Of a DNA stretch of 64,000 nt, positions 3,955-36,555 are shown one piece after another. The stretch covers positions 173,916 through 237,915 of the IMG/VR virus record IMGVR_UViG_3300043464_002284. The stretch is one strand, 5' to 3'. Under the pieces are notes generated by a model. The model ran no database searches. It was not told the origin of the DNA and saw only the letters and a list, made by a program, of their open reading frames with translations. The first letter of the stretch is position 1. Each line of letters starts with the position of its first letter. The position numbers and the translations under genes are program-made.

Positions 3955-5195
3955 ACCGAAGACATTTTTTAAATCACTGTGCCGCAACATCTTCTCTGGT
4001 AGCATCTTCGTCTTTTTTTACTCAGTCTATTTTAGCTAATGCTAATGATTTAAAGAAAAGACATAAGAGTGCTATTCTTTTATGGATGGGTGGTGGCCCA
4101 AGCACTATTGATCTATGGGATTTAAAGCCGGGTGCTGCTACTGGTGGAATTTTTAAGCCAGTATCTACTAGTGCTGATGGTATTCAGATTTGCGAACATC
4201 TGCCACTAATGGCACAGCAAATGCACCACATGAATATTGTACGATCTATGAGTACAAGAGAAGCAGACCACATGAGAGGTCGCTATTATATGCACACAGG
4301 ATATGTTCCTAATCCTAATGTTGAGCATCCTAGTTATGGATCAGTCATTTCTCATGAATTAATGTCTAGCATACCACAACTTGATATTCCTCCATTCGTT
4401 AGTATTGGAGGAACCAGTATTGGTGCTGGATTTTTGGGAACATCTTATTCTCCATTCGTAGTTAATTCTAATGGAACAGTTCGTGATCTTGATATGGGCA
4501 TAGATCAGTCTAGATTAGACCAAAGACTCAATATGCTTAAAACTATCGAAGATAAGTTTGTAAATGAAAAACGTGGAGACTATGCTTCTGACCACTCTAA
4601 ACTTTTGACTAAAACAGTCAAGCTAATGACTAGTCCTCAGATGGAAGTATTCAAAGTATCTAAAGAACCAAAAGAAGTTCAAGAAAGATATGGTAATACA
4701 GGATTTGGCCGAGGTTGTTTGATGGCACGAAGATTGGTGGAAATGGGTGTTCCATTTATTGAGGTTGATCTTGGCGGATGGGATAATCATACTGATATTT
4801 TTAAGACTCTACAGGATCAAAAACTTCCAGAACTAGATAAGGCTATGAGTGCCTTGATAAGCGACCTTAGCGATAAAGGACTGTTGCAGGATACTGCTAT
4901 TATTTGGATGGGTGAATTTGGACGAACGCCAAATATTAATGGTAATGGTGGGCGAGATCATTGGGCTAGAAGTTGGAGTGTCGTTGTTGGTGGAGCAGGA
5001 TTTAAGGGTGGTATTGTTGTTGGAGAAACTAGCAGTGATGGTAAGGAAGTAATTACGGAACCATACTCATCTCAAGACTTAATGGCTAGTGTTCTTAAAT
5101 CATTAGGAATATCTTTAGAAACCAATTTTACTGCTAAAAATGGACGACCAATGAGAATTGCTAATAGTGGCAAACTTATTAAAGAACTATTTTAA
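3951..5195 (+). CDS. DUF1501 family protein with Tat signal (Planctomycete-type)
   Basis: MNRRHFL twin-arginine signal; WMGGGPSTIDLWDLKP, GGWDNH, GEFGRTP, GRDHW motifs. Confidence 0.92.
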   Translation: MNRRHFLNHCAATSSLVASSSFFTQSILANANDLKKRHKSAILLWMGGGPSTIDLWDLKPGAATGGIFKPVSTSADGIQICEHLPLMAQQMHHMNIVRSMSTREADHMRGRYYMHTGYVPNPNVEHPSYGSVISHELMSSIPQLDIPPFVSIGGTSIGAGFLGTSYSPFVVNSNGTVRDLDMGIDQSRLDQRLNMLKTIEDKFVNEKRGDYASDHSKLLTKTVKLMTSPQMEVFKVSKEPKEVQERYGNTGFGRGCLMARRLVEMGVPFIEVDLGGWDNHTDIFKTLQDQKLPELDKAMSALISDLSDKGLLQDTAIIWMGEFGRTPNINGNGGRDHWARSWSVVVGGAGFKGGIVVGETSSDGKEVITEPYSSQDLMASVLKSLGISLETNFTAKNGRPMRIANSGKLIKELF

Positions 5196-5545
5196 TGTCT
5201 AGAAAAATTTGTACTTATTGTGAGAAACGTAAAAACTTAGCAAGTTTTCCCAAACATAGTATGTACAAAGACAATCTTGACAGTAGATGTAGAAAATGTG
5301 TCAAGAAACATTCTAAGATACGAGTTAAGCTACATAAAAAAGCGCCACCAAAACCAGAAGTATGTGAGTGCTGTAAAAAGGTTCCCTACAAATGGGCCTT
5401 AGATCATGATCATGATGATAATAGTTTTAGGGGTTGGCTCTGCGAACCTTGCAATACTGGTATAGGTAAATTGGGTGATGATTTTCAAAGCATCGTTAAC
5501 GCTATGAATTATTTTCTTTCAAGACAAAAACGATATGAAAAATAA
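5195..5545 (+). CDS. Recombination endonuclease VII family nuclease
   Basis: CECC...LDHDH...RGWLCEPCNTGIG. Confidence 0.88.
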   Translation: MSRKICTYCEKRKNLASFPKHSMYKDNLDSRCRKCVKKHSKIRVKLHKKAPPKPEVCECCKKVPYKWALDHDHDDNSFRGWLCEPCNTGIGKLGDDFQSIVNAMNYFLSRQKRYEK

Positions 5546-11599: not shown

Positions 11600-11674
11600 G
11601 GGAGCGTAGTCCAATTGGCAGCAGACAAAGGACTTAAAATCCTTCCAGTGTGGGTTCGAGTCCCACCGCTCCTA
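11600..11674 (+). tRNA. tRNA-Leu(UAA) with short variable region, CCA not encoded
   Basis: Acceptor GGGAGCG/CGCTCCT plus A; anticodon arm AAGGA-CTTAAAA-TCCTT; T arm GTGGG-TTCGAGT-CCCAC; variable region CCAGT. Confidence 0.9.
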
Positions 11675-11704
11675 CTTAATCCTTTTTAAAATGAGTTTAC
11701 TCTT

Positions 11705-18296: not shown

Positions 18297-19469
18297 GTGG
18301 AAAAAGGAAAACAAATGTTTAGCGATACTTTGGCTTTTAATCCGTTCGATAAGACTCATAGTGCTATTGGAACAAGAGATCAGATTGCTTTGCGAAATAA
18401 GTTTTTTGATTCTTTTGGTGGTCAGCAGATTTTTTGCTATAACGGTGATCCTCGTAAGAAGATCAGCAGTATGAATCATACGGATCATCTTACCACCGTT
18501 GCTATTGCAAATGATAGTCAGGGTGCTGATGCTTACTTCTATGTTAATGGTGGACGTAAGCAATATGCTATTAGTAGAATTCGTGCTTGTTTTGTTGATA
18601 TGGATGCTGGGCGAGATGATCAAGGTCGTTATTTTAAACCCAGCATCGTCATGCAGAAGAAAAAGGAATTCTTGAACCAGATTAATAACTTTCCAGTAAA
18701 GCCAAGTTGGGTTGTTGATACTCGTAATGGTTATCAGTGCTATTGGATTCTAAACCAAAACAATATAAATCCTCACAAGACCTATTGGAATGGTATTCAA
18801 AAGAAACTTGTAAATCATTTTGGTGGTGATGCCCGAGCTATTAAAATCAATCAGATTTATAGGATCCCTTATACTTGGTGGAGGAAGGGTTGGGAAGGAA
18901 AGCAGCCTTATTTTACCAGTATTTTATCGGGATCAACTGGTGATTGGGTTAATATTGAACAGCTTAAAGAAGCTCTTGATGGTGTTTCTGCTGTGGTTAA
19001 TATTGTTGCTAATAAGACTAGTGACGAATGGTTTAAGGAATATGCTAAGGCTTATAAAAGGTCTGACGTTACTGGGGTTCCGGTATCAGTTAATGTTGCT
19101 GCAACCATTGCCAATCAGATGAACTCTTTAAACCTTAACACCTATACAAATAGTACAGACGATATCAAGAAGTATAACCATTCTAAGTATGTTTATACTA
19201 GTAGCGGCGCTCTGTTCAATAAGGCTTATGGTGATCCTACTCCAGTGTCTCCTGTGACTGAGGACGATACAGACGCTCTTGAGCCGCTTCCTGTTGACGC
19301 TGGGGGCGAGGATTTAGATCTTGACGGTTCACAGACCAAGCTTTTAAAGACGGTCGTGGAGTTCCTTAATCAAGTCTCAACGCCCCTCTACTTTAGTAAC
19401 AACAGATTCTTGTCTAATGCTGCTAAAGAACTAGCCTCTAAAATTAGTGACAAGTTTTGTATTGGATGA
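18297..19469 (+). CDS. RepB-type (AEP superfamily) DNA primase domain protein; start probably ATG 18315
   Basis: CFVDMD, PSWVVDTRNGYQCYW, QIYRIPYT. Confidence 0.75.
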   Translation: MEKGKQMFSDTLAFNPFDKTHSAIGTRDQIALRNKFFDSFGGQQIFCYNGDPRKKISSMNHTDHLTTVAIANDSQGADAYFYVNGGRKQYAISRIRACFVDMDAGRDDQGRYFKPSIVMQKKKEFLNQINNFPVKPSWVVDTRNGYQCYWILNQNNINPHKTYWNGIQKKLVNHFGGDARAIKINQIYRIPYTWWRKGWEGKQPYFTSILSGSTGDWVNIEQLKEALDGVSAVVNIVANKTSDEWFKEYAKAYKRSDVTGVPVSVNVAATIANQMNSLNLNTYTNSTDDIKKYNHSKYVYTSSGALFNKAYGDPTPVSPVTEDDTDALEPLPVDAGGEDLDLDGSQTKLLKTVVEFLNQVSTPLYFSNNRFLSNAAKELASKISDKFCIG

Positions 19470-20496: not shown

Positions 20497-20736
20497 ATGA
20501 ATACGTATTTTGAAATAAGGTTTAATAGAACAGAGTATAATAAAGCTTGTAATACAATGTCAGAGGTTATTCTAGCAATAGAAAAAGCTCTCAATGAAGA
20601 CAGAGTAATAGCTGAAACCATAACGGAAAAAGACAAAAAGACAGATAGAGTCACAACCATTTACAAACCCGACTTCTCTGCTAAACTGGAGTGGACAGAG
20701 ATTCCCAAATACAGAGGCGAAACCCTAGTATCATGA
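20497..20736 (+). CDS. Hypothetical protein
   Basis: Operonic packing. Confidence 0.6.
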   Translation: MNTYFEIRFNRTEYNKACNTMSEVILAIEKALNEDRVIAETITEKDKKTDRVTTIYKPDFSAKLEWTEIPKYRGETLVS

Positions 20737-21167
20737 AAGATGAACAATGGTTTTTTATTAATGATTTTGATGATTTTGTTGACCATTCAAGATCTTTAGT
20801 CTTTAAGTTTTTTGGAGCCGTAAATGAGATGGCTGATGATTCTATGACGGCATCTCTCACACAGATGAGCCAAGAAGAGTTAGAGGAGATGGATGAAACA
20901 CTAACTCATGATGAGTCTGCTATTATCATAAAAAATTACGCCAGAAAACAGGTCAATAGAAAAACAAAAGAAACCAGATATTGTCTAACAGACAAACTTC
21001 TTCAGTCTATTATAGAAGACATGAATAATAGAATGATTAGTAATATATTAAACTCTTTGGTCAATAAAGGAGTTCTTGATAGTGCATACGATAGTGATCA
21101 AAACGACTTTATTTTTTGGGTGAAAGATGACGACAATAAACAAAATCAAAAACCTGAGACCGACTGA
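20691..21167 (+). CDS. Hypothetical protein, distant member of paralog family A; start probably ATG 20733
   Basis: C-terminal LVNKGVLDSAYDSDQNDFIFW parallels LAAKGFVDCSWDDESNEMVFW. Confidence 0.65.
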   Translation: MDRDSQIQRRNPSIMKDEQWFFINDFDDFVDHSRSLVFKFFGAVNEMADDSMTASLTQMSQEELEEMDETLTHDESAIIIKNYARKQVNRKTKETRYCLTDKLLQSIIEDMNNRMISNILNSLVNKGVLDSAYDSDQNDFIFWVKDDDNKQNQKPETD

Positions 21168-21531
21168 GATTGACGGAAGTTTTAAGTATAGTTGCCCAAA
21201 CTGCTCTAGCGATTATTGGGCTACCTTAAAACAAGTCAGATGTAGAGAATTTGTAATAGTTTGTGATTGTGAAACTATTTTAAAACCAAAACCAGTAGAA
21301 CTTATTAGAATAGTATACAAAAAGAAAAAACAAAAAAAAGTATCAGAAGATGTTTTAGATCCTGAAATTTTGGATCGTTGTTGTAAGTCTTTAATGTCTT
21401 ATGGTTTTGACAAAGAAGAAGCAACAAAGCTAATACAAAAAGCCTATAAAGATACAAAAAATACTGATTGTGCTACTTTGGTAAAAATGTCCCTATCTAA
21501 TTTTGGAGAAAATAATGGCAAATGCAATTAG
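21127..21531 (+). CDS. Zinc-ribbon plus RuvA domain III-like protein
   Basis: CPNC...CDC N-terminus; C-terminal SLMSYGFDKEEA...TLVKMSL resembles the RuvA C-terminal domain; directly upstream of ruvB. Confidence 0.65.
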   Translation: MTTINKIKNLRPTEIDGSFKYSCPNCSSDYWATLKQVRCREFVIVCDCETILKPKPVELIRIVYKKKKQKKVSEDVLDPEILDRCCKSLMSYGFDKEEATKLIQKAYKDTKNTDCATLVKMSLSNFGENNGKCN

Positions 21532-22417
21532 ACCCACTCGTTTTAGTGAGATTATTGGTCAGGCAGAGGTTGTGAATCGACTAGGTATCGTTGTGGCGGG
21601 CTGTAAAAACTCAAATGGTGTGATGCCTCATGTTTTAATAGACGGCCCGCCTGGGCTTGGTAAGACCACCATAGCGAGTGCCATAGCTACAGAGATGGGT
21701 GAGAATCTTTATACTGTGAATGGTGCTAATGTACGGAGCGTAAAAAATCTGTTACCATATCTTATGGGTATTGCTCCAAGATCAGTTCTTTTTATTGATG
21801 AAATCCACAGACTTCCAAAAATAGTGGAAGAATTCCTTTATCCTGTTATGGAAGATTTCGTTCTTAGTATTGTAGTGGAAGATAAGCCAGAGAATATTGA
21901 ATTGCCAATGTTTACCTTGGTGGGGGCTACTACTAGTGGGGGTAGTTTAAGTCAACCATTTTATGATAGGTTTCAAATTAAAGAACATTTGTCTTTCTAT
22001 AGCGACGATGATTTAGCTAAACTCGCCAGGTCGAACGCAGACAAGCTCGGACTAATGATTGACGATAATGATTTGCTAGAAATCGCAAAGAGGAGCAAAG
22101 GAACTCCGCGTATTTTAAATGGTAGATTGCAGTGGTACAAGAATTGCGTCTCTTACTATGCGGATAAGAAGATGACAGTTGATGATATATTTAATAATCA
22201 GGGTATTGATAAAAACGGGTTGGATGTGTATGATAAGATGTATTTAACGGTACTTACTAAATCTCGGGGTACGGCATTGGGTTTGAAAAGCATTTCTTCT
22301 TTGACTGGCATAGCTATTGAAACTATTGAAAATAGCATAGAGCCATATCTTGTTCGTCGAGGTTTTGTGGTCAGAACCCAAAAGGGAAGGGTAATAGGCT
22401 CATATAAAAATGAATGA
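21503..22417 (+). CDS. ruvB: Holliday junction branch migration ATPase RuvB; start probably ATG 21515
   Basis: RPTRFSEIIGQ, GPPGLGKTT, LFIDEIHRL, GATT, RSKGTPR, IEPYL, RTQKGR. Confidence 0.95.
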   Translation: MEKIMANAIRPTRFSEIIGQAEVVNRLGIVVAGCKNSNGVMPHVLIDGPPGLGKTTIASAIATEMGENLYTVNGANVRSVKNLLPYLMGIAPRSVLFIDEIHRLPKIVEEFLYPVMEDFVLSIVVEDKPENIELPMFTLVGATTSGGSLSQPFYDRFQIKEHLSFYSDDDLAKLARSNADKLGLMIDDNDLLEIAKRSKGTPRILNGRLQWYKNCVSYYADKKMTVDDIFNNQGIDKNGLDVYDKMYLTVLTKSRGTALGLKSISSLTGIAIETIENSIEPYLVRRGFVVRTQKGRVIGSYKNE

Positions 22418-22742
22418 AATATCAATATCCATAAATTTACCAACTATAATTTTTTTCTCAATCACACTCCTAGTAATAGGGGTGTGTTTGTTTTTAATTG
22501 GCTATTTTATCGGAAAACAACACAGTGCTGGTGTATCTATTAGTGCTACTAATATAAGGCCAACAAGCTTTTTTGAAGAAGCAAAAAAAGAAAAACAAGC
22601 TTTGAGTATTGATGACACCAAGTATGTTGTTGATATTAAAACGTCAGGAATGGAAAAGAAATACGAGTCTTTAGGTGATATTAAAAAATCCGAAGAAAAC
22701 ATAAGCAATTCTATAAATAAACTTAAGAATATGAAGAGGTGA
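22410..22742 (+). CDS. Single-TM protein upstream of the actin-like ATPase
   Basis: N-terminal TM, soluble C-terminal tail. Confidence 0.65.
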   Translation: MNEISISINLPTIIFFSITLLVIGVCLFLIGYFIGKQHSAGVSISATNIRPTSFFEEAKKEKQALSIDDTKYVVDIKTSGMEKKYESLGDIKKSEENISNSINKLKNMKR

Positions 22743-22746
22743 AAAA

Positions 22747-23751
22747 ATGGCAGCTGGATTAGACGTCGGTACAAGCTATATTGTTTTATCAAAAGAAGAT
22801 AAAAAAAGCCACATCATGTATAAAGATTTTAGAGATGCATTTTATGTCATCAAACCCACAACACCAGTTGCTACAAAAATGATTGAAAAAGGTCTTGCTG
22901 GTAAGGTTTTCATTAAAGATAGTGACGGTTCTTTTGTTCTCTTAGGTAAAGATGCGATTGAAAAAGCCATAGAGAGAAACGACACAGCAAAAAGACCTAT
23001 GTATAAGGGTGTTGTTTCCGCTAAAGAAAAAGATGCCAAAAAGATCCTGGCTTTCATCTTGAAAGAAGTTGTTGGTCAAGCCTCAGAGGAAAACGAACAG
23101 CTTGTATTTTGCGTACCTGCTCAACCAGTAGATCAAGAAGATGAAGATTTTGATGTTGGATATCATGAAGATGTGGTAAAGACAATTTTAAGAGAGTGTG
23201 GATATAATGCAAAAGCAATAAATGAAGCCGAAGCTCTTTGTTACGCTGAATTAGATGTTGAGGACTATACGGGTATTGCTGTTAGTTGTGGTGCTGGGAT
23301 GACTAATGTTTGTGTTATGTTGAACGGTGAGCCTACTGTTGTTTTTAGTACAACTAAAAGTGGCGATTGGGTAGATCGTATGAGTGCCGTAGCAACGGGA
23401 GAACCAGACAGTGTTGTTCAAGCAGAGAAGGAGGGCGGGGGTTTTGTAATAGGAGAACCCAGCGATAGTCCTGTTTTGGGTGCTGTGTCAGCATACTATG
23501 AAAGACTGATCGACTATACAACTAAACAGTTAGCTCACGCACTATCTAATCATAAATCTTTGCCAAAGTTTAAAAATCCATTAACTATTGTTGTTGCTGG
23601 TGGAACTTCGCAAGCCGCTGGATATATTGAGCAATTTGCTAAAAAACTAGAAGAGAATGGATTTCCTCTTAAAATTAAAGAAGTAAAACATGCAGCAGAT
23701 CCACTGCACGCTGTTGCTAAGGGGTGTTTGATAGCAGCAAAGGTTTTGTAA
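22747..23751 (+). CDS. Actin-like ATPase (MreB/ParM/Hsp70 fold)
   Basis: Phosphate-1 GLDVGTS, connect INEAEA, phosphate-2 SCGAGMTN, adenosine VVAGGTS, AVAKG. Confidence 0.85.
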   Translation: MAAGLDVGTSYIVLSKEDKKSHIMYKDFRDAFYVIKPTTPVATKMIEKGLAGKVFIKDSDGSFVLLGKDAIEKAIERNDTAKRPMYKGVVSAKEKDAKKILAFILKEVVGQASEENEQLVFCVPAQPVDQEDEDFDVGYHEDVVKTILRECGYNAKAINEAEALCYAELDVEDYTGIAVSCGAGMTNVCVMLNGEPTVVFSTTKSGDWVDRMSAVATGEPDSVVQAEKEGGGFVIGEPSDSPVLGAVSAYYERLIDYTTKQLAHALSNHKSLPKFKNPLTIVVAGGTSQAAGYIEQFAKKLEENGFPLKIKEVKHAADPLHAVAKGCLIAAKVL

Positions 23752-24063
23752 ATGTTTAATTTTCTGAAAAAACTCAGATATGCGGTCCGGTCTCCAAAAT
23801 GGCAAAACGTAAGAAAAGAACACATTAAAAATAATCCGTCTTGTATTGCCTGTGGCAGAGATAGGAAATTAGAAGTACACCACATAAAGCCTGTACATTT
23901 ATTTCCTGAGCTAGAACTAGATCCTTCAAATCTTGTTACATTGTGTGCTGATCCATGTCACTTATTGTTTGGTCATTTAATGCATTTCAAGAGTTGGAAT
24001 AGCTCTGTTATAGAGGATAGTTCTGATTATTTAGATAAGATAAAACGCAGACCATATTTTTGA
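23752..24063 (+). CDS. HNH endonuclease
   Basis: CIACG...EVHHIKP...NLVTLC..PCH. Confidence 0.9.
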   Translation: MFNFLKKLRYAVRSPKWQNVRKEHIKNNPSCIACGRDRKLEVHHIKPVHLFPELELDPSNLVTLCADPCHLLFGHLMHFKSWNSSVIEDSSDYLDKIKRRPYF

Positions 24064-24109
24064 ATATAGTGTATGTATAATATGACCAAAATACCCAAGA
24101 GGTTATATT

Positions 24110-25060
24110 ATGGCTAAAAAAAGATCCAATAAAAATAATTGTGGACTGTTTCCGTATATCAAAGAAGAACTATACGGGGATTTCTCAGATGGTCAAAAAA
24201 TACCTTGGTCTATTGAGAAGTTTCATATAGATCAACTGTGGAATGCTTCAACTGGCGAAGGTATTAAGGTTGCTGTTATAGATAGTGGATGTGATTTAAA
24301 TCACGAAGATCTTAAAGACAATTTTATCCAGGGTAAAAACTTTGTTGAACCAAACAAAGACCCTATGGACGAGAACAGTCACGGTACTCATGTTGCTGGT
24401 ACTATCTGTGCAAAAAATAATAATCTGGGGGTTGTTGGAATAGCCCCAAACGTACAGATCATGCCCATTAAAGTCTTTGGGGCTGATGGTCGTGGCGACA
24501 ACAGAACGGTCTCTAATGCGATTGTGTGGGCTGCTGATCATGGCGCTGATATCCTGTGTATGTCTTTGGGTTCTCCGTATCAGTCAGCAGATCTGGAATC
24601 AGCTATTAATTATGCTCTTAAAAAAGGAGCTGTTTCATTTTGTGCTGCTGGCAATGGTGGTGAATCATCAGAAATATATTATCCAGCTAGGTATGAGCAA
24701 ACAGTTAGCACCGGAGCAATTGACGAAAAATTAAATCGAGCTTACTTCACATGCAAGGGTAGCGAATTAGATTTTCTGGCTCCAGGATTTAATATCTTAA
24801 GTACTATTCCTGGAAATAAATATGCTTTGATGAGCGGCACCAGTATGGCTAATCCATTTGTTGTGGGATGCGCATCATTATTGCTGTCTTATGTAAGAAA
24901 AGCCAAACTAAATACTAAATTAAAAACAGCAAATGACTATATAGAAATTTTACAAAAATACACATTTAATTTATCTAATCCTAATTATTCTAATCATAAA
25001 GAATACGAAGGAAACGGTGTGCTAGACCCAAGGAAATTCAACGGATGGCAAGACCTGTGA
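24110..25060 (+). CDS. Subtilisin-like serine peptidase (S8), intracellular type
   Basis: VAVIDSG, HGTHVAG, AAGN, SGTSMA; no signal peptide; N-terminal GLFPY resembles the LIPY motif of ISPs. Confidence 0.95.
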   Translation: MAKKRSNKNNCGLFPYIKEELYGDFSDGQKIPWSIEKFHIDQLWNASTGEGIKVAVIDSGCDLNHEDLKDNFIQGKNFVEPNKDPMDENSHGTHVAGTICAKNNNLGVVGIAPNVQIMPIKVFGADGRGDNRTVSNAIVWAADHGADILCMSLGSPYQSADLESAINYALKKGAVSFCAAGNGGESSEIYYPARYEQTVSTGAIDEKLNRAYFTCKGSELDFLAPGFNILSTIPGNKYALMSGTSMANPFVVGCASLLLSYVRKAKLNTKLKTANDYIEILQKYTFNLSNPNYSNHKEYEGNGVLDPRKFNGWQDL

Positions 25061-25833: not shown

Positions 25834-26224
25834 CTTCCCGTCCCCAGAGTCCCTCTTTTTTCAGTCTGGCTTTCTCTTCTCTTCTCCATACCTCCAGCTC
25901 TTTATAGTATGAATTCATTCTTCTTGTTTCAAAAACAGTATAAGTATGGACTATTCTGGGATTATATAGATGGTGTGGATTGTTAGTATTTAATCCAGCA
26001 CTATTTCTAGGAGTATAATTACTACTCTGAATACGATCCGCATATAAGTATGATTCTCCATATATTCTTCCAGACTGACCATAGCCAGAAGTTTCTGCTA
26101 CTTTAGCCGTATTGATAAAGCTACCCAAATTTTGATTAATGGGTAGTAAATCCATAGACTGTTGAGCAATAGCCGTCGAGTTAGTTGAAGCTATCAGTAA
26201 AATAAAAAAAACTGAACGAAACAT
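25808..26224 (-). CDS. Hypothetical secreted protein
   Basis: Signal-peptide-like N-terminus; GAGG RBS on minus strand. Confidence 0.6.
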   Translation of the reverse strand: MFRSVFFILLIASTNSTAIAQQSMDLLPINQNLGSFINTAKVAETSGYGQSGRIYGESYLYADRIQSSNYTPRNSAGLNTNNPHHLYNPRIVHTYTVFETRRMNSYYKELEVWRREEKARLKKEGLWGREAIEDLYSP

Positions 26225-26292
26225 AAAAGTACCTCATAGTGTCAATTATAGCCTATGATAGTAGTCAGGTCCAGTTGGTGGTCAATTATTTT

Positions 26293-27267
26293 TCATAAAA
26301 CCACATCAACGAGATTATTGCCTAATCCTATGATTCTCTCTTTTGTTCCTAATGTATGTACTAAATATGGCGATTCAACATTTAAATTATATTCAACATT
26401 AGGTAGGCCATAGTTGTCTGCTAGTTCACAGTATGTAGATGCGTATTGTGGATTTTGTTGCATAAAAAGGTTGAGCTTGTCAATGCTTCCGTCAAAATTC
26501 CTGATATGTGCAACTGTATTTCTGTTAAATTCTGAATTTTCATATATTTTGTTTAAGCTATTATGAAAACCTATGGGTATTTCGGTATCTAAGGTGCTCC
26601 ATATTGTTCTCTGGTAGTTTCCCCATATCCATTGACTATAATTGACTGGCCCAAGTGAGGGCTGTAGAGTTGAAATAAATCCTACTCCATGATGAAATAT
26701 TTGGACATTTGTTGCTAAAGAATTAAATCCACAATAAGTAAGATAGGGTAAGATATCATCTATAGCTAATCTGTCTCTATGATAATTAAAGTTTTTTAGA
26801 ACATATTGGTATGCTCTTTTTTTGATTATATATGCCCACCCTCCAGTTGATTTGAAATTTTTTGATAAATGAGGAGATATTGGTATGCAGTGTTTTCTTC
26901 CATTAAATCCGAGCAATACAACATCCCAATCAGAATCAAGTAGATGACTACACAGTTCTGGCAAATATTCTCTCAGTGGCAAGACGTTGCTGTCAAATAA
27001 AACGCTAACATTATTATATAACTGAAAGTCATCTTCAAAAACACAAACACTTTCATACCCTCTTTCATCAGATATTTCAAGTGCTCTAAAGTGGCTTTTG
27101 GTTGCAGAAGCCTGATGTAGGGAGTCTTTGAGTGCTTCTAATCTTGTTAGTCCTTGTATTTCAAACTCATCTATTTGTTTTTCTACATTGGATAATCTGT
27201 CTATAGAACTAGGTAAGTTTATATAAAAAGCATGATCAGATAATACATTGTTGTGTAATGAAAACAT
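26293..27267 (-). CDS. Glycosyltransferase family 25-like
   Basis: FYINLPSSIDRL, SHFRAL, CVFEDD, GGWAYIIKK, AIDD. Confidence 0.85.
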   Translation of the reverse strand: MFSLHNNVLSDHAFYINLPSSIDRLSNVEKQIDEFEIQGLTRLEALKDSLHQASATKSHFRALEISDERGYESVCVFEDDFQLYNNVSVLFDSNVLPLREYLPELCSHLLDSDWDVVLLGFNGRKHCIPISPHLSKNFKSTGGWAYIIKKRAYQYVLKNFNYHRDRLAIDDILPYLTYCGFNSLATNVQIFHHGVGFISTLQPSLGPVNYSQWIWGNYQRTIWSTLDTEIPIGFHNSLNKIYENSEFNRNTVAHIRNFDGSIDKLNLFMQQNPQYASTYCELADNYGLPNVEYNLNVESPYLVHTLGTKERIIGLGNNLVDVVL

Positions 27268-27924
27268 TTAGTTATTCAAATAAAAGTTGTGTGATTTTCT
27301 AGTATTATAATTCCGTTCGTCTTCGTTGTTGAAATTCCAATTTTTATTTGCTGTTGGATCAGATATGACATAATTGTGAGTAAATATCTGATTTTGAATA
27401 TATTTGTGTTTACCTAAAATTTTAGCCACTTCCATGTACTCATTATCACAGTAGATGCTTTTATATGTAGGATTGTATATAAAATTAAATCTATCATAAT
27501 ATTTTTTAGTCATTATGCATCCTATGTCTAATCTTTCTTCCCAGCTAGGATTCATATAGTGTAAAGTTCCATCCATATCTGGATGATACTCAATCATATT
27601 TTTCACTATGATGTCATCGTAATCTTGAACTATAGGGAACAGATCGTCTGCGGCTAATATCAGTATATCGTAATCATTGGCATTATCCATATCGGCATTT
27701 ATTGCTTCAATTTTATTGCTTGATGTTCCATAATAGTATTCTATATTGGATTTGTTATTCAGGTAGTTTTTTATTTCTTCTGAGTTCATGCTCTCGTCAT
27801 CAGTATCAAATGAACATATAAATTTAAGAGTGTGTTTATGTGATTGCTTATCTATATACTCTGATAATACTTGTTTAAATTTTTCTGGACGACCCCTAGA
27901 AGGGAATTTTATTAAGATTTTCAT
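27268..27924 (-). CDS. GT-A fold (GT2-like) glycosyltransferase
   Basis: LIKFPSRGRPE, SFDTDD, AINAD, LAADDLFP, YCDNE. Confidence 0.75.
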   Translation of the reverse strand: MKILIKFPSRGRPEKFKQVLSEYIDKQSHKHTLKFICSFDTDDESMNSEEIKNYLNNKSNIEYYYGTSSNKIEAINADMDNANDYDILILAADDLFPIVQDYDDIIVKNMIEYHPDMDGTLHYMNPSWEERLDIGCIMTKKYYDRFNFIYNPTYKSIYCDNEYMEVAKILGKHKYIQNQIFTHNYVISDPTANKNWNFNNEDERNYNTRKSHNFYLNN

Positions 27925-28496
27925 AGTCTTTTACTTTCTGTTTTTTGTGCCAATGATGTCCAGCCATTGGTTCCTGTATTTTTGATTATTTTATAGTGGT
28001 TGTTTTCTAGATAATTATACACATTAGATTTTAAATGTAGATTTTCAAAATATATATTCAGGATATTAAATCGGCTAAAATCAATTGTTTGTATTATTCC
28101 ATCATCTAGGCCCTCTGTATCAATAAATAATATATCTATAGTATTAATATTATATCTATCAAATAGACCGTTTATTGTTTGACATGCTATCTTTTTTTCT
28201 ATAATGCCGTCTTCATCATATCCGTGTTTCAGTATGTGGCTTTTGTCTAAAGATGCAACCTCATACAAAGGTCCATCATTTTTGTGATAATAAAAGCTTG
28301 TTTCTGTTGCATCATTCTTTATTGATACTGCTATGTTTTCTATATGTTTATTTTTGATATGACTATAGCATTTCTCTATGTCTGAATTATGAAAGTCTAA
28401 TGGTTCGACTAAAACAAGTAAGTCAATATCTTTGTTTTTAATGATTTCCGTTAGGTCATCATTTCCTTTACAAACGCCTAGCTGAAATATTTTCAT
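27921..28496 (-). CDS. FkbM family methyltransferase
   Basis: QLGVCKGND, LVEP, IDILFIDTEGLD, IYFE. Confidence 0.85.
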   Translation of the reverse strand: MKIFQLGVCKGNDDLTEIIKNKDIDLLVLVEPLDFHNSDIEKCYSHIKNKHIENIAVSIKNDATETSFYYHKNDGPLYEVASLDKSHILKHGYDEDGIIEKKIACQTINGLFDRYNINTIDILFIDTEGLDDGIIQTIDFSRFNILNIYFENLHLKSNVYNYLENNHYKIIKNTGTNGWTSLAQKTESKRL

Positions 28497-29368
28497 ACAA
28501 ATTCCTTGACTAATTTTATAAATTCAGACGCTCTATTTTGGTAGCTGTGATTTTTTATTACTTTATTGTATCCAGATTCAGCGATTTGTTTTGTCAGTCT
28601 TAGGTCGTTAATCAACATATTTGCTTTGTATGTTAAGTCTTGCATATTATGATATATGACAATATCTTCCATATCAATAAACAGTTTATCAATATTTTCT
28701 GTGTGGTTTGTTAATAGTGCCGTTTTACACGCTAGTGTCTCGAATACTCTGTAGTTTATATCTTTGCTTATTGTTTTGTTTAGATGTATATCATAGGTAT
28801 TAATAGCAGACACCATGTCGTAACCTATATGCCAAACATCTTTTTGTATATTTATATCTAGATTTTTTTCTAATTCCTTTATGAGAGATTCTCTTTCTGG
28901 AAAAAGAGTACCACAAAATCCTATGTTGTATAATTTATTTGCTTTAAAAATTGGTTGAATTAAATCAGTATCTACAGCGTTAGGAAAATAATATGTTTTA
29001 GCTCCCAGAGCAGAAAAATGTTCTTGATCAGATTCTATTGAGCATAGAACGCCGTCTATTTTATGCTTTTGAACAGTTACCTTGTGAGCATTTAAATTAC
29101 AGTGAGAATCTATGCTCCAAAAAAATTTAGGTATTTTTATAGAAGATAGATCTGGTACCCAAGACGTTGTGTCGTAATTTTCTAGTAACAATACAGCATC
29201 ATGAGATGTGACTAAATCTTGAATATTGCTGGGGTGGTTGGGGTAGTTAAGACCCCAAACTGTACAGGAGTCACCATTTTTTTCAAAAGCTCTTTGAAGA
29301 CTCAGTGATTCTCTAAATAATTGATTTTTTTCGTGCCGACCCTTTTCTTGAATAATTAGTATTTTCAT
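28493..29368 (-). CDS. CgeB-like GT-B glycosyltransferase
   Basis: GFCGT...R, INYRVFETLAC...LLT, DIVIY, HSYQNRA. Confidence 0.85.
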   Translation of the reverse strand: MKILIIQEKGRHEKNQLFRESLSLQRAFEKNGDSCTVWGLNYPNHPSNIQDLVTSHDAVLLLENYDTTSWVPDLSSIKIPKFFWSIDSHCNLNAHKVTVQKHKIDGVLCSIESDQEHFSALGAKTYYFPNAVDTDLIQPIFKANKLYNIGFCGTLFPERESLIKELEKNLDINIQKDVWHIGYDMVSAINTYDIHLNKTISKDINYRVFETLACKTALLTNHTENIDKLFIDMEDIVIYHNMQDLTYKANMLINDLRLTKQIAESGYNKVIKNHSYQNRASEFIKLVKEFV

Positions 29369-29379
29369 TATTTAATTAT

Positions 29380-29991
29380 TTATTGTGGTATAAAAAATGT
29401 ATTACCAGAAGTTTTTGCATATTCTTTATAGTTTATGCTTTTAATAAAATCAATCAGAACGTATGTTTCCATGCTGTGTTCTACGCAAACAAGAGATGGT
29501 CTATTTTTAGTCCAGTCATTTGATGATAATACCTCCATATCCACACCTTCTGCATCTACACTTAAAAAGTCTACTAAATTATTATTTATGATACTATTTA
29601 GTGTTTTTGTTTGCGTTTTCACTGGATGATATTCAAACTTATCTCCGTGTTTTGATATCACTCTATTTTTAAAAGATTCAGAAATAGTAGAAACACAGGC
29701 ATCCTGTCCAGTAGAATACATAAAAAAATCGACTTCAGTTTCTTTATTTAAACAGGCGTTATTTAGTATAGTTATTTGATCATTATTACCATATAGTGAT
29801 TTTAGTGTTTCAAAAAAAACAGGGTGTGGTTCTACCAGAATTCCTCTCCAATTATATTGTTCTACTAAATATCTTGTATTAGAATAAGTAATCCCATCCA
29901 TTGCTCCTATATCCACAAAAAATCCATTTGTTTTCCCATTAAAAAATGGAATTATTATTGATTCCTCACCATATTGTGCATAAAATGACAT
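29380..29991 (-). CDS. FkbM family methyltransferase
   Basis: YAQYGEE, FVDIGAMDGITYSNT, GILVEP, DFLSVDAEG. Confidence 0.9.
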   Translation of the reverse strand: MSFYAQYGEESIIIPFFNGKTNGFFVDIGAMDGITYSNTRYLVEQYNWRGILVEPHPVFFETLKSLYGNNDQITILNNACLNKETEVDFFMYSTGQDACVSTISESFKNRVISKHGDKFEYHPVKTQTKTLNSIINNNLVDFLSVDAEGVDMEVLSSNDWTKNRPSLVCVEHSMETYVLIDFIKSINYKEYAKTSGNTFFIPQ

Positions 29992-30005
29992 AAATATTCC
30001 TAATA

Positions 30006-30692
30006 TTATAACATTGTGTAGTGATCTGGGTGTCTATTATTATATTCGTCATATATTTCTCCAACAAATCCACTATTTGTTCTTTCTGTTGGAAATGACT
30101 TGCTTTGATTCTCATCCAAAAGACGATATGAATCATGAATAAAAGAATACTCTTTAACTTTAGGATAGACGTATTCTCTTAGAAAGTTTTGATCAACTTG
30201 CCAGAAATTACCGTCCTCTGGAACAACCATAGCAATCTCCAGCCTGTTTAGTAAATTATTCCTACATCCCCACATTCCTCCTAATATAGCGGTATTGTGA
30301 TAAGGATGATCTCTCATAATATGAAAATCTTTATCGGAAGCCAACCATTCAGCAACAGCGTCCCCTTCCCTACTGCTTAATCTACTGTCAGCATCACGAG
30401 AAAGCATAACGTCTATCTTTTCATCGAAAGCCGGAAGAAATCTCCAAAACATTCCGGTCCAATTCCCCGGCTGATCCATAAAAATCAACTCAGTATTATC
30501 TATTCTTCTAAGAACGGCTACAGTAGATGATGGAACAGACTGACCTAGATAAACAATGGTTTTCCAGTCAGGGTATATTTGTAATCTCAGTTTAGCATTT
30601 TCTATTACCCCAATATTATATTTGGGATGATTTCCCCATAGACTGAAACATACTGCTTTGGTCATAGGTTTCCCGTGATTCTCTCGCACCAT
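30006..30692 (-). CDS. GT-A-like putative glycosyltransferase; start probably MTKAVCFSLWG (30664)
   Basis: FSLWG..PKY, GMFWRF, SRDADSR (DxD), FHIMRDHPYH, ILGGMWG. Confidence 0.6.
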   Translation of the reverse strand: MVRENHGKPMTKAVCFSLWGNHPKYNIGVIENAKLRLQIYPDWKTIVYLGQSVPSSTVAVLRRIDNTELIFMDQPGNWTGMFWRFLPAFDEKIDVMLSRDADSRLSSREGDAVAEWLASDKDFHIMRDHPYHNTAILGGMWGCRNNLLNRLEIAMVVPEDGNFWQVDQNFLREYVYPKVKEYSFIHDSYRLLDENQSKSFPTERTNSGFVGEIYDEYNNRHPDHYTML

Positions 30693-31936
30693 CCTTTTGA
30701 TTTGCTATAAGGCCACACAACCCAGTATTTGGGTTTAATATCAGTAGAGAATTCTCTCCAAATTTTACAGTATTTATCAGGGTCATTTTTCATCATATTG
30801 ATTTCATTGTCGTCTGCATCTTTTCGGAATAGGGTATTATCGTGCTCATCGTGGAATGCAACTACCCAGAAATCATAATCGGTTTCTGGAACCCTTTCGT
30901 ATCCAACATCTATACAATGTTTGAAAATCTTTAACAGAGCAATATCAAATTCTTCGTCAGAAGCATTTTGTAAAAGATCAGGAGGAGCTTTATGGTCTAA
31001 TACGTGTCTCTGGATAGCTCTTTTACCGAATGATAGTCCAGAATATTTTTCATAATCTCTTAGTGATCTAACTTTTCCAAATCCATAGGGTCCGAAATCA
31101 ATATCTCTTTTTTCTCCATCCATTTCAAAGAGTTTTCTATTTCTCAGATGAGATTCGTTATTTCTATTGACCCAGATAGGATCGTCGTCCCATTGTTTTG
31201 TTCGTCCTTTTCTGGTATATTCATGCCAACAAACAACTTTATGAGGATGATATAAGTCATATCCCTGAGTATAGGCTCTGGCTGCTATGCTTATTTCTTC
31301 TCCATGAAAATAATAATTAGGATCATGCTTTACTTCTTTGCAAAATTCTCCGACAGTAAAAGCAAAATGAGCACTATAAAATCTAGCTGGTAAAGGCTTA
31401 GTTTTATCGTCCCATGAATCAAATGATGCAGGAAGAAAAAAGACAGCTCCTTCTGGTATAAATCTATCAAAATTCATTTTCCATGGTTCTTGAACCCTCG
31501 CGGCTGGATCGTTATCTGGATCAAAACTGGGGATATAAGCCGTTAATAGGGGTTTGGGACTTCCGTTTTTTTGTAGTTCGGTTATCATTTCTATTAATGT
31601 TTCATCCCAATCTTGAACAAATCTATGATGACTATCGAGTTGTAGAGTATATTTTTCTCCTTGATATAATGCCTGAACAGCATTTCTGGCCCAGCATACA
31701 CCCTTGGACTCTTTGTAGTTTACGTCTAGGATTCTAAATCTTGAATCGTTTTTATATTCAGATATATCATCCCAATCATCTCCGTCTTTATGTTGCCATG
31801 CTATCCCGATCCTTAAATTTTCTGGATATTTAGCTTTCTCTATCATGTCCTTGAGAGTGGGGGATAGTTGAGGATCTCTATAAGCGGCTATTTGTACAAA
31901 AATTGTATTAGTTTTCTCTTCGCTCATGGGCTTCAT
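30662..31936 (-). CDS. GT60-like GlcNAc transferase (Skp1 hydroxyproline GlcNAc-transferase Gnt1 family)
   Basis: IFVQIAAYRDPQL, GVCWAR, LQLDSHHRF..WDETL, KPLLTAY, SAHFAF, FHGEE..IAARAYTQGYDLYHP, HEY. Confidence 0.85.
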   Translation of the reverse strand: MKPMSEEKTNTIFVQIAAYRDPQLSPTLKDMIEKAKYPENLRIGIAWQHKDGDDWDDISEYKNDSRFRILDVNYKESKGVCWARNAVQALYQGEKYTLQLDSHHRFVQDWDETLIEMITELQKNGSPKPLLTAYIPSFDPDNDPAARVQEPWKMNFDRFIPEGAVFFLPASFDSWDDKTKPLPARFYSAHFAFTVGEFCKEVKHDPNYYFHGEEISIAARAYTQGYDLYHPHKVVCWHEYTRKGRTKQWDDDPIWVNRNNESHLRNRKLFEMDGEKRDIDFGPYGFGKVRSLRDYEKYSGLSFGKRAIQRHVLDHKAPPDLLQNASDEEFDIALLKIFKHCIDVGYERVPETDYDFWVVAFHDEHDNTLFRKDADDNEINMMKNDPDKYCKIWREFSTDIKPKYWVVWPYSKSKGWCERITGNL

Positions 31937-33560: not shown

Positions 33561-33604
33561 TGATATGGATTAGTTATAAAGAGGTTATCTGCCCGGCCTG
33601 CATA

Positions 33605-33684
33605 ATATTATTCCTTCTCCATCTGGTTGTCAATGCTTAATTTTTTTAGCAACATCTTGACTTTTTGAAAGATACGATTATACT
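33605..33684. promoter_or_regulatory. Divergent sigma70-type promoter pair driving both arms of the glycosylation island
   Basis: Minus: TTGACA (33633-33628)-17-TAATAT; plus: TTGACT (33657)-16-TATACT. Confidence 0.65.
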
Positions 33685-33735
33685 AATATTGGTTGTCGGT
33701 TTGAAAATTAATACGATTTTTTTAGCGAAAAGGCA

Positions 33736-33933
33736 ATGAAAAAGCAGAATAATGAAGGTGAATGGGACAAGAAGGAAGCAAGAAGAAAAAAGCTTCAGGA
33801 AAAGAGCCTATTTAAGGACGATCCCAAAAACGAAAAAACAGTGTCTCATTCTCTAAAGAAAGAGCTTAAAAAGAAAAAGCAGGAAATAGACGAAGAAGAG
33901 TGGGAAGATTGGGACAGGCATTATAATAGATAA
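33736..33933 (+). CDS. Small charged hypothetical protein
   Basis: K/E-rich. Confidence 0.6.
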   Translation: MKKQNNEGEWDKKEARRKKLQEKSLFKDDPKNEKTVSHSLKKELKKKKQEIDEEEWEDWDRHYNR

Positions 33934-33935
33934 TC

Positions 33936-34190
33936 ATGGAAAAATTTATCGAGGAACTCGGTGCTGGGGACATCTTTGAGGTAGAAAATCAAAGATTTGT
34001 AATAACATCTGATTTTAAGAAAAATGGAGATAGGCTTTGCATAAATCTTAATACTGGAAACGTTAGATGGTTTAAATCAGATTCTCACGTTATTCATATT
34101 AGTCTATATGCAATGGATAATAATAACAATTTTCATCCTATAAAAGAGATTAAATCAGATGTATCTACTAAAATTCAAAGTATTTTTTAA
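33936..34190 (+). CDS. Hypothetical protein
   Basis: Operonic packing. Confidence 0.6.
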   Translation: MEKFIEELGAGDIFEVENQRFVITSDFKKNGDRLCINLNTGNVRWFKSDSHVIHISLYAMDNNNNFHPIKEIKSDVSTKIQSIF

Positions 34191-34407: not shown

Positions 34408-34419
34408 TGGAGACCAATA

Positions 34420-34971: not shown

Positions 34972-34985
34972 GATATACTATTATT

Positions 34986-36534: not shown

Positions 36535-36555
36535 ACAGAAGACAAAAGAAAAGCA

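What the first reader, a model, noticed from the sequence alone, without database searches (positions are those of the whole stretch)
21127..22417. RuvB paired with a Zn-ribbon/RuvA-domain-III chimera instead of RuvA
The ORF overlapping the ruvB start ends in a segment (SLMSYGFDKEEATKLI...TLVKMSL) matching the pattern of RuvA domain III, the RuvB-binding domain. The OB and HhH junction-binding domains are replaced by a CPNC...CDC zinc ribbon. This implies a different loader that recruits the RuvB motor to another substrate, or a RuvA competitor. No ruvC is in the window, and endonuclease VII (5195) could be the resolvase.
Basis: partly seen in the sequence, partly recalled or inferred. Interest (0 to 1): 0.65.

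Follow-up and report, generated by a model that had tools for sequence, protein, structure and literature searches.

The report
Phage RuvB with zinc-ribbon RuvA-tail partner
A large uncultured phage carries its own RuvB DNA motor, and the small gene overlapping its start encodes a zinc ribbon joined to the RuvB-binding tail of RuvA, so the motor's usual Holliday-junction clamp appears to have been replaced by a different, unstudied adaptor.

Summary
ORF A (21127-21531, 134 aa) overlaps a genuine ruvB (ATG 21515-22417) by 17 nt.

**C-terminal domain.** Residues about 79-130 are homologous to RuvA domain III.
- Family profile against PDB: 1ixs_A, E 1.8e-4.
- hhalign against 61 bacterial RuvAs: probability 90%, E 1.5e-6.
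- Pfam RuvA_C hits 13 of 150 family members. No other family hits more than 2.
- In the AF2 model, the top 11 structural matches are all RuvA domain III (Z 6.0-8.2).

**N-terminal domain.** It is a C4 zinc ribbon (C23, C26, C46, C48, invariant or nearly so), joined to domain III by a linker of variable length. No OB or HhH domain, RuvA_N or RuvC was found in the 238-kb phage genome. Endonuclease VII, a ligase and a RecA/UvsX-like gene are present.

**Family and linkage.** The family is large (567 cluster representatives) and unannotated. It sits directly upstream of ruvB in 69 of 80 related phage loci, and was lost at least 5 times while ruvB stayed.

**Complex prediction.** Only weak support: ipSAE 0.60 against 0.01 for the best control.

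**Best reading.** ORF A is a phage-specific RuvB adaptor and activator. What the zinc ribbon binds is unknown. It is a new variant of a known kind.

The parts
21127..21531 (+). ORF A, 134 aa: zinc ribbon - linker - RuvA-domain-III protein. It belongs to a large unannotated phage family.
   Evidence: ORF. 16 close homologues. 567 cluster representatives at E<=1e-3, and the best 150 all have the same two-domain architecture at 105-184 aa.
21160..21294 (+). Zinc-ribbon domain, residues about 12-56, preceded by a basic N-terminal tail. Ligands are C23, C26, C46 and C48. Y21, H/Y30, W31 and F42 are conserved.
   Evidence: Cysteines invariant or nearly so in 150 members. AF2 model shows beta-hairpins 18-22 and 29-33 with pLDDT 81-91. 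Scattered weak hits to zinc-ribbon Pfam families. The N-terminal tail carries a mean net charge of +3.6.
21295..21360 (+). Lys-rich linker, residues about 57-78. Its length varies from 15 to 80 residues across the family.
   Evidence: pLDDT 55-63. Length and charge statistics from A6.
21361..21516 (+). RuvA domain III homologue, residues about 79-130. It is a three-helix bundle with conserved L89, Y/F92, G93, F/Y94, E98, L118, K120 and L123.
21505..21508 (+). GGAG ribosome-binding site for ruvB, lying inside the ORF A coding sequence 6 nt before the ATG.
   Evidence: Sequence read directly.
21515..22417 (+). ruvB, 300 aa from ATG 21515. It is an AAA+ motor with intact Walker A and B, sensor and arginine-finger positions, a lid and a C-terminal winged helix. 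The presensor-1 hairpin is shorter than the bacterial one.
   Evidence: Pfam. NCBIfam NF000868 above cut-off. Columns invariant against bacterial RuvBs. Hairpin region.
20733..21167 (+). Conserved upstream gene of 144 aa from the ATG (158 aa from GTG 20691). It overlaps the ORF A start by 41 nt and is present in 80 of 80 related loci. Fold and function are unknown, and it is not RuvA-like.
   Evidence: hhalign against RuvA, probability 0.2%; best Z 5.6.
22410..22742 (+). 110-aa predicted membrane protein overlapping the ruvB stop by 8 nt. It is conserved in close relatives and has no assigned function.
5195..5545 (+). Endonuclease VII homologue, the candidate junction resolvase of the phage.
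   Evidence: PF02945, 5.2e-13, 49.1 bits against a cut-off of 23.6.

Best explanation
ORF A is a phage-specific partner of the phage's own RuvB motor. It takes over the RuvB-facing half of RuvA's job.

**Proposed mechanism.**
- Its C-terminal three-helix domain is a true homologue of RuvA domain III. It docks on the presensor-1 beta-hairpin and helix alpha3 surface of RuvB (inferred).
- By analogy with RuvA D3, it recruits RuvB and stimulates nucleotide exchange and ATP hydrolysis (inferred).
- The variable, flexible linker corresponds to RuvA's domain II-III tether.
- The N-terminal C4 zinc ribbon, with its basic tail and conserved aromatic residues, replaces RuvA's OB and HhH junction clamp. 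It supplies the anchor, most likely on DNA (inferred, untested).
- The resulting motor would drive branch migration or fork remodelling during recombination-dependent replication of a T4-like jumbo phage. Endonuclease VII, not RuvC, would resolve junctions.

**Shown:** domain identities, homology to RuvA D3, tight gene linkage and translational coupling with ruvB, and absence of RuvA and RuvC from the genome.

**Inferred:** physical binding, stimulation of RuvB, and the zinc ribbon's ligand.
For: **Homology to RuvA D3**
- PDB profile hits 1ixs_A at 1.8e-4 and 1ixr_A at 9.4e-4 (repeated with 150 sequences, 2.6e-4).
- The family HMM run against 1,898 ORFs from 80 bacterial ruvB loci hits almost only the C-terminal 50 aa of the RuvA ORFs, best 5e-8.
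- hhalign probability 90%, E 1.5e-6.
- Pfam RuvA_C in 13 of 150 members.
- NCBIfam ruvA is the only hit for the window protein.
- VIA-align Z 6.0-8.2 for 11 RuvA entries, above all UBA domains.

**Linkage to ruvB**
- 17-nt overlap, with the ruvB RBS inside ORF A.
- ORF A lies directly upstream of ruvB in all 7 loci found through ORF A and in 69 of 80 loci found through RuvB.
- The same arrangement holds on two distant contigs, one of them a TARA marine sample.

**The RuvB is a functional-looking motor**.

**No other RuvA-like gene and no RuvC in the genome**. Endonuclease VII, a ligase and a RecA/UvsX-like gene are present.

**Complex prediction.** ipSAE 0.60 in 3 runs against a best control of 0.01. 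Partner pLDDT at least 83 and at least 86% contact agreement between runs. The tool's verdict was 'weak support'. In its calibration, 58 of 80 solved complexes and 2 of 110 mismatched pairs reached the mark. Only 7 of those 80 solved complexes passed at 0.60 or under, as did both mismatches that passed.

**Literature.** RuvA D3 binds the PS1 hairpin and alpha3, and acts as nucleotide-exchange factor and ATPase activator, with RuvA as the fulcrum (PMC9477746; PMC10272136).
Against: - ORF A is missing from 11 of 80 related loci and from five whole relatives' records. Two of those records have terminal repeats, and four are estimated complete. The positive control for that search worked. These relatives also have no RuvA_C or RuvA_N.
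- The RuvB tree needs at least 5 losses. RuvB can therefore persist without ORF A.
- The complex score is only 'weak', and may reflect memory of solved RuvA-D3/RuvB complexes.
- Nothing shows that the zinc ribbon binds DNA. No informative sequence or fold match was found for it.
- A monomeric adaptor lacks RuvA's four-fold junction clamp, so branch migration of a Holliday junction is not guaranteed.
Confidence: 0.6

Rival explanations
1. Modulator or competitor rather than loader. The free-standing D3 module titrates or re-tunes RuvB hexamers. It could shield the phage RuvB from capture by host RuvA, or bind host RuvB and disable or hijack host RuvAB. In this reading the zinc ribbon is only a stabilising or regulatory module.
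For: - ORF A is dispensable in several lineages that keep ruvB. That fits an accessory or conflict-related role.
- RuvA and RuvB pair across species (PMC9477746 used S. typhimurium RuvA with S. thermophilus RuvB), so a D3 module could act on host RuvB.
- ORF A diverges much faster than RuvB: 27-54% against 72-88% identity in the same loci.
Against: - Strict gene order and translational coupling with the phage's own ruvB point to a 1:1 working partner.
- The zinc ribbon has more invariant positions than D3, which is not expected for a passive appendage.
- No test of binding to host proteins was possible, because the host is unknown.
Confidence: 0.17
2. Protein-protein bridge. The zinc ribbon binds another phage protein rather than DNA. 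Candidates are the always-adjacent 144-aa upstream gene product, the prim-pol-like protein or another replisome component. RuvB would then be tethered to a protein complex.
For: - The upstream gene is present in 80 of 80 loci and overlaps the ORF A start.
- The cluster sits among replication genes: a prim-pol-like gene at 18297-19469 and rIIB in relatives.
- Zinc ribbons often mediate protein contacts (general knowledge).
Against: - The upstream gene stays next to ruvB even where ORF A is lost, so its role does not depend on ORF A.
- It has no recognisable DNA-binding or RuvA-like fold: hhalign probability 0.2%, best structural Z 5.6.
Confidence: 0.15
3. Coincidence. The C-terminal bundle is a generic UBA-like three-helix domain unrelated in function to RuvA, and the adjacency to ruvB is just inherited synteny within one phage lineage.
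For: - All loci belong to one monophyletic phage RuvB clade, so the linkage counts are not independent.
- Small helical bundles give middling Z-scores easily (note).
- The window sequence alone gets no Pfam hit.
Against: - Sequence profiles pick RuvA specifically. None of the 150 members matched a Pfam UBA model, and RuvA_C is the only recurrent family.
- hhalign E 1.5e-6.
- RuvA entries outrank UBA domains by 2-3 Z units.
- The conserved hydrophobic positions coincide with the conserved L..LGY...EA....LI+..L pattern of RuvA D3 (alignment).
- Linkage persists at ORF A identities down to about 27%.
Confidence: 0.05

Closest known systems
Bacterial RuvA, the Holliday-junction binding subunit of RuvAB (e.g. 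PDB 1IXR, 1C7Y, 7PBL series)
   Same: - The C-terminal domain is homologous to RuvA domain III in sequence and predicted fold.
- It is tethered by a flexible linker.
- The gene lies immediately upstream of ruvB and is translationally coupled to it.
   Different: - It lacks domain I (OB fold, RuvA_N) and domain II (helix-hairpin-helix), which build the tetramer and clamp the junction.
- They are replaced by a roughly 45-residue C4 zinc ribbon with a basic tail.
- The protein is 134 aa against about 200 aa.
- Oligomeric state and DNA specificity are unknown.
- It has been lost repeatedly without loss of ruvB.
Isolated RuvA domain III fragment, as co-crystallised with T. thermophilus RuvB (1IXS) and seen on RuvB in cryo-EM (7PBL-7PBT, 7X7P)
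   Same: - It is the best sequence-profile hit (E 1.8e-4).
- It is also a structural match: Z 6.9, rmsd 1.9 A, 50 residues aligned.
- It is expected to use the same hydrophobic face.
   Different: - The fragment is a laboratory construct, whereas here nature has put the module on a different N-terminal domain.
- Identity is only 12-18%.
- The phage RuvB hairpin it should bind is several residues shorter than the bacterial one, or carries an acidic insertion.
UBA-like three-helix domains (UBA, CUE)
   Same: They share the overall three-helix bundle fold. They appear lower in the structural hit list, at Z 4.9 or less.
   Different: - No UBA or CUE Pfam model matched any of the 150 family members.
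- There is no ubiquitin system in this context.
- RuvA D3 scores clearly higher.
T4-type recombination-dependent replication (UvsX, UvsW branch-migration helicase, gp49 endonuclease VII)
   Same: The genome has endonuclease VII, a RecA/UvsX-like protein, a ligase, and rIIB in relatives. RuvB with ORF A could fill the branch-migration slot.
   Different: - T4 uses the SF2 helicase UvsW, not an AAA+ RuvB.
[quoted passage not shown]
- Whether this genome also has UvsW was not checked.

Membership tests
RuvA | Domain I: N-terminal OB fold (Pfam RuvA_N, PF01330) | tested here: not met
   No hit in ORF A at E<=1. No hit in the whole genome in six frames, and the controls rang. The AF2 model shows a zinc ribbon instead.
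RuvA | Domain II: two helix-hairpin-helix motifs | tested here: not met
   No HhH family among the Pfam hits of ORF A or of 150 family members. The model has no helices between residues 39 and 78.
RuvA | Domain III (Pfam RuvA_C, PF07499), the RuvB-binding three-helix domain | tested here: met
   Family profile against 1ixs_A, 1.8e-4. hhalign probability 90%, E 1.5e-6. RuvA_C in 13 of 150 members. Z 6.0-8.2 to 11 RuvA entries. The window sequence alone is below Pfam's threshold.
RuvA | Gene adjacent to and co-transcribed with ruvB | tested here: met
   17-nt overlap. Adjacent in 69 of 80 plus 7 of 7 related loci.
RuvA | Physical binding of D3 to the RuvB presensor-1 hairpin | tested here: inconclusive
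   Complex prediction gave ipSAE 0.60 against a best control of 0.01, verdict 'weak support'. No interface was reported, and the result may reflect memory of solved complexes.
RuvA | Tetramer that clamps a four-way junction | not testable with these tools
   No oligomer or DNA-complex prediction was available. The domains that do this in RuvA are absent.
RuvB | RuvB_N AAA+ domain, RuvB lid and RuvB C-terminal winged helix, scoring above curated cut-offs | tested here: met
   PF05496 157 bits, PF17864 33.5 bits, PF05491 62 bits. NF000868 at 298.5 bits exceeds its 282 cut-off. TIGR00635 at 272.6 bits falls below its 299 cut-off.
RuvB | Catalytic motifs: Walker A, Walker B, sensor 1, arginine finger, sensor 2 | tested here: met
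   G44-T52, V91-R99, T139-T140, R152 and T197-R199 are invariant across 15 phage and 33 bacterial RuvBs.
RuvB | Presensor-1 beta-hairpin, the RuvA-binding element | tested here: inconclusive
   The segment is present and conserved in the phage clade. It is shorter than the bacterial consensus, or carries an acidic insert. Its structure and contacts were not examined.
Zinc ribbon (C4) | Two CxxC / CxC knuckles on beta-hairpins | tested here: met
   C23 in 148 of 148, C26 in 149 of 149, C46 in 150 of 150 and C48 in 149 of 150 members. Beta-hairpins are present in the model. Metal binding itself is not testable here.
UBA-like domains | Match to UBA or CUE sequence models | tested here: not met
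   No UBA or CUE family among the Pfam hits of 150 members. Structural Z 4.9 or less, below RuvA D3.
Endonuclease VII (candidate resolvase, 5195-5545) | Pfam PF02945 above the gathering cut-off | tested here: met
   49.1 bits against a cut-off of 23.6, E 5.2e-13. Activity not tested.

The most novel reading that the evidence does not exclude
The zinc-ribbon/D3 protein is a new class of AAA+ adaptor that retargets a RuvB motor away from four-way junctions. The target could be another DNA structure or a protein complex, such as stalled or reversed forks, recombination D-loops, or concatemer branches ahead of packaging. The same D3 'plug' may also act on host RuvB. RuvA domain III would then be a portable RuvB-recruitment module that evolution has moved onto a different targeting domain.
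Probability: 0.25. Interest if true: 0.8.

Novelty: new variant of a known kind. Interest (0 to 1): 0.6.

Why it matters
RuvAB is a textbook machine in which RuvA does two jobs. It recognises the junction through domains I and II, and it operates the RuvB motor through domain III.

Here a large natural family separates those jobs. The family has 567 clusters at 50% identity. It is found in freshwater and marine phage contigs and has no annotation. It keeps the motor-operating module and swaps the recognition module for a zinc ribbon.

This gives a direct experimental handle on three questions:
- What does D3 alone contribute to RuvB loading, nucleotide exchange and force generation?
- Can a RuvB motor work without a tetrameric fulcrum?
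- How do jumbo phages that lack RuvC process branched DNA?

It also assigns a probable role to a widespread 'hypothetical protein', and flags a clade of uncultured phages with their own RuvB. No cultured phage in GenBank has a RuvB closer than about 40% identity.

Tried and rejected
**Searches that gave nothing decisive**
- Pfam and PHROGs on the window's ORF A alone gave only noise-level hits.
- A Pfam RuvA_C six-frame search of the genome missed ORF A. The model is too insensitive for this family.
- megablast of the region and tblastn of ORF A against 50,697 GenBank phage records found no match.
- RuvB tblastn in that collection returned only bacterial-type RuvBs at about 40% identity or less, in prophage-edge or contaminated records, plus clamp-loader or RarA-like hits.

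**Ideas rejected**
- 'Split RuvA': the conserved upstream gene might supply the junction-binding half. Rejected so far. hhalign against RuvA gave probability 0.2%. PDB profile hits had E>0.5. Foldseek gave only weak MarR/SarA-like rows at E>0.1. The exhaustive structural search had a best Z of 5.6, with no RuvA entry.
- Frameshift fusion of ORF A to RuvB. Unlikely, because the junction varies from a 2-nt gap to a 29-nt overlap among relatives, and ruvB has its own RBS and ATG.
- Phage PaBG's 'RuvB helicase-like protein' is a 221-kDa virion protein (PMC7412058), not a relative of this system.

**Zinc-ribbon function.** BFVD, the ESM Atlas (by features and by structure) and PDB gave only generic zinc-ribbon look-alikes.

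**Relaxation of the RuvB hairpin in lineages without ORF A.** Three of these lineages have polar substitutions (L031/39/41, L046, L049), but the L014-L019 group is unchanged. The result is suggestive only.

**Complex prediction.** The verdict was 'weak support', so it is not used as proof of binding.

**Literature.** Searches found no description of a phage RuvB partner of this kind. The library does not hold most subscription journals.
Full report
**Setting.** The window is the last 64 kb of a 237,915-bp virus record, a jumbo-size phage with GC about 35%. The finding covers two overlapping + strand ORFs: ORF A (21127-21531, 134 aa) and a 300/304-aa ORF ending at 22417.

**The motor is a real RuvB.**
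- Pfam gives RuvB_N 3.4e-46 over the full model, the RuvB lid at 3.5e-8, and the RuvB C-terminal winged helix at 5.1e-17.
- It passes the NCBIfam RuvB equivalog NF000868, 298.5 bits against a cut-off of 282. It falls just under TIGR00635, 272.6 against 299.
- In an alignment with 33 bacterial RuvBs, the Walker A, Walker B, sensor 1, arginine-finger and sensor 2 positions are invariant.
- The likely start is ATG 21515, with GGAG 6 nt upstream inside ORF A. The overlap with the ORF A stop is 17 nt, and gene callers on relatives chose the same start.
[quoted passage not shown] It is shorter than the bacterial consensus, or in some relatives carries an acidic insert.

**ORF A alone is nearly invisible to family libraries.**
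- Pfam and PHROGs gave only noise.
- A six-frame Pfam RuvA_C search of the genome found nothing.
- The one exception is NCBIfam. The only hit under E 0.01 is TIGR00084 (ruvA), E 0.0048, with residues 72-123 aligned to model positions 150-201 of 202.

**With relatives the signal becomes significant.**
- The word search found 16 homologues.
- IMG/VR scans found 7 loci through ORF A and 80 of at least 351 loci through RuvB.
- The exhaustive HMM search found 567 cluster representatives at E<=1e-3, of which 115 are at E<=1e-30. The best 150 are all 105-184 aa and cover both domains.
- A 41-sequence profile hits the T. thermophilus RuvA domain III chain that was crystallised on RuvB (1ixs_A) at E 1.8e-4, and full RuvA (1ixr_A) at 9.4e-4. 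Other RuvA D3 chains follow. The 150-sequence profile gives 2.6e-4.
- Run against all 1,898 ORFs of 80 bacterial ruvB loci, the family HMM picks almost only the last 50 residues of the roughly 200-aa ORF upstream of ruvB, which is RuvA. The best hit is 5e-8.
- hhalign against an alignment of 61 of those RuvAs gives probability 90%, E 1.5e-6. Query residues 77-127 align to the extreme C-terminus of RuvA.
- The same test with the neighbouring gene family gives probability 0.2%, which serves as a negative control.
- Scanning 150 members one by one against Pfam, RuvA_C is the only recurrent family: 13 members, best 3.5e-6. Every other family has 1-2 members, and those are mostly assorted zinc ribbons.

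**Structure.**
- The AF2 model has mean pLDDT 74. It shows a zinc ribbon (strands 18-22 and 29-33, pLDDT 81-91), a poorly ordered linker (55-77), and a three-helix bundle (79-130, pLDDT 82-88).
- Foldseek ranks RuvA chains first. For 2h5x_C it gives probability 1.00 and rmsd 1.1 A over 47 columns, and for 1ixs_A a TM-score of 0.78 by target. E-values are only 0.2-1 because the domain is small.
- Re-alignment with VIA-align puts 11 RuvA entries on top, at Z 6.0-8.2, rmsd 1.2-2.2 A and 46-52 residues aligned. UBA and CUE domains start at Z 4.9.
- The tool warns that Z under 8 is common for small helical domains. The structural result is therefore corroboration, not proof.

**Conservation pattern in 150 members.**
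- C23, C26, C46 and C48 are invariant or nearly so. P12, Y21, H30 (Y in the window) and W31 are near-invariant, and F42 (83%) and Y64 (85%) are strongly conserved.
- The N-terminal tail is basic, with a mean charge of +3.6.
- The linker ranges from 15 to 80 residues.
- D3 has a constant length of 47-52 residues, with conserved L89, Y/F92, G93, F/Y94, E98, L118, K120 and L123.
- In the hhalign alignment these fall on the conserved L..LGY...EA....LI(R/K)..L pattern of RuvA D3.
- From my own recollection, not tested here, the E. coli equivalents (L167, L170, Y172, L199) are the hydrophobic RuvB-contact residues.

**Linkage.**
- ORF A lies directly upstream of ruvB, with anything from a small gap to a 29-nt overlap, in all 7 loci found through ORF A and in 69 of the 80 best RuvB loci.
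- The same holds on two distant short contigs, one from a TARA marine sample.
- The close relatives L002-L006 share the whole gene order: rIIB, prim-pol-like gene, small ORFs, upstream 144-aa gene, ORF A, ruvB, a 110-aa membrane protein, an actin-like gene, HNH, and proteases.
- All of these RuvBs form one clade on a long branch from bacterial RuvBs, which are at most 45% identical. The nearest are Planctomycetota MAGs. The linkage counts are therefore not independent events.

**Losses.**
- Eleven of the 80 loci have no ORF A. There the upstream gene abuts ruvB.
- Five such records have no ORF A homologue anywhere. Two of them have terminal repeats, and four are estimated 100% complete. The positive control on the window's own genome scored 3e-49.
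- These records also have no RuvA_C or RuvA_N.
- On the RuvB tree the absence needs 7 changes by parsimony, and at least 5 are forced by well-supported branches.
- ORF A is therefore ancestral to the sampled clade but repeatedly dispensable.
- From general knowledge, E. coli RuvB alone can drive branch migration in vitro at high protein and Mg2+ concentrations. A RuvB without a D3 partner is thus not absurd, and host RuvA might also substitute.

- It gave ipSAE 0.60, 0.59 and 0.60, against 0.01 for the best of three controls.
- Partner pLDDT was at least 83, and at least 86% of contacts agreed between runs.
- The tool's verdict was 'weak support'.
- In its calibration, 58 of 80 solved complexes and 2 of 110 mismatched pairs reached the mark. 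At 0.60 or under, only 7 of those 80 solved complexes passed, as did both mismatches that passed.
- Because RuvA-D3/RuvB complexes are solved, a pass may show likeness rather than binding. No interface was reported.

**Rest of the pathway.**
- No RuvC, RuvA_N or RuvA_C was found in the genome.
- Endonuclease VII lies at 5195-5545 (5.2e-13), and an ATP-dependent DNA ligase at 5747-7102.
- A RecA/UvsX-like gene lies outside the window, at G000 34302-35120.
- This resembles T4-style recombination-dependent replication, with a RuvB motor added.
- No cultured phage record has a RuvB of this clade.

**Mechanism.**
- Cryo-EM work shows that RuvA D3 binds a hydrophobic surface made of RuvB helix alpha3 and the presensor-1 hairpin. 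It acts as a wedge that promotes ADP release and, by inter-subunit signalling, ATP hydrolysis. It also tethers the motor to the RuvA-junction core, which serves as the fulcrum (PMC9477746; see also PMC10272136).
- By homology I propose that ORF A's D3 does the first two things for the phage RuvB.
- The zinc ribbon with its basic tail would then provide a different anchor, probably DNA.
- This last step is inference only. No search gave the zinc ribbon a specific relative.
- Three rivals remain. ORF A could be a competitor or modulator of host or phage RuvAB. It could be a bridge to another protein, such as the always-adjacent upstream gene product. Or the resemblance could be a coincidental UBA-like domain, which is now unlikely.

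**Verdict.** The domain interpretation is supported, and the functional interpretation is plausible but untested. ORF A is not a RuvA, because two of the three defining RuvA domains are absent. It is a new architecture built on RuvA's RuvB-operating module, in a large unannotated phage family.

**Limits.**
- The 81-bp 'terminal repeat' lies inside a tandem-repeat coding region, so genome completeness is likely but not certain.

Noticed in passing
window 22747-23751 (+): An actin-like ATPase of 334 aa matches Pfam Volactin at 2.7e-62 over the full length. NCBIfam gives weak hits to salactin, BeeR and MamK. It lies two genes downstream of ruvB and is syntenic in most related phage loci. A phage-encoded actin homologue of an archaeal-named family is unusual and could serve DNA positioning.
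   Followed up: partly
window 20733 (or GTG 20691)-21167 (+): The conserved 144/158-aa gene upstream of ORF A is present in 80 of 80 related loci and abuts ruvB where ORF A is lost. The AF2 model has pLDDT 77 but no convincing known fold: Foldseek E>0.1 with MarR/SarA-like rows, and best VIA Z 5.6. It shows no similarity to RuvA.
   Followed up: yes
window 3951-5195 (+), and loci L094-L099: A DUF1501 protein (1.8e-103) has a twin-arginine-like N-terminus. The nearest bacterial RuvBs (43-45% identity) come from Planctomycetota MAGs. Together these are a faint hint at a Planctomycetota-type host, and nothing more.
   Followed up: no
window 63063-64000 (+), runs off the end; G000 ends: The record's 'direct terminal repeat' is only 81 bp. 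It lies within a Thr/Pro-rich tandem repeat of an ORF that runs off the contig end, in a region of GC 0.44 and GC skew -0.31. It may be a repeat-induced assembly overlap rather than a true terminal redundancy.
   Followed up: partly
window 2223-2295 and 11600-11675 (+): Two tRNA genes: tRNA-Ile(TAT) and tRNA-Leu(TAA).
   Followed up: no
window 18297-19469 (+): A 390-aa protein has weak prim-pol or RepB-primase-like matches (PHROG 3123 at 8e-9, PHROG 2478 'DNA polymerase/primase'). It heads the gene cluster that contains ORF A and ruvB.
   Followed up: no
window 23752-25060 (+) and relatives: An HNH endonuclease (2.5e-8) is followed by a subtilisin-like S8 peptidase. In relatives a trypsin-like protease also follows, directly after the actin-like gene.
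   Followed up: no
loci L031, L039, L049, L057 (about 3890-4260 in L031): In several lineages without ORF A, a roughly 124-aa protein with a signal-peptide-like N-terminus is inserted just downstream of ruvB. Whether this relates to the loss of ORF A is unknown.
   Followed up: no
window about 26000-44000: GC skew turns from positive to slightly negative and GC content drops to 0.29-0.33. This is consistent with a block of genes on the opposite strand.
   Followed up: no
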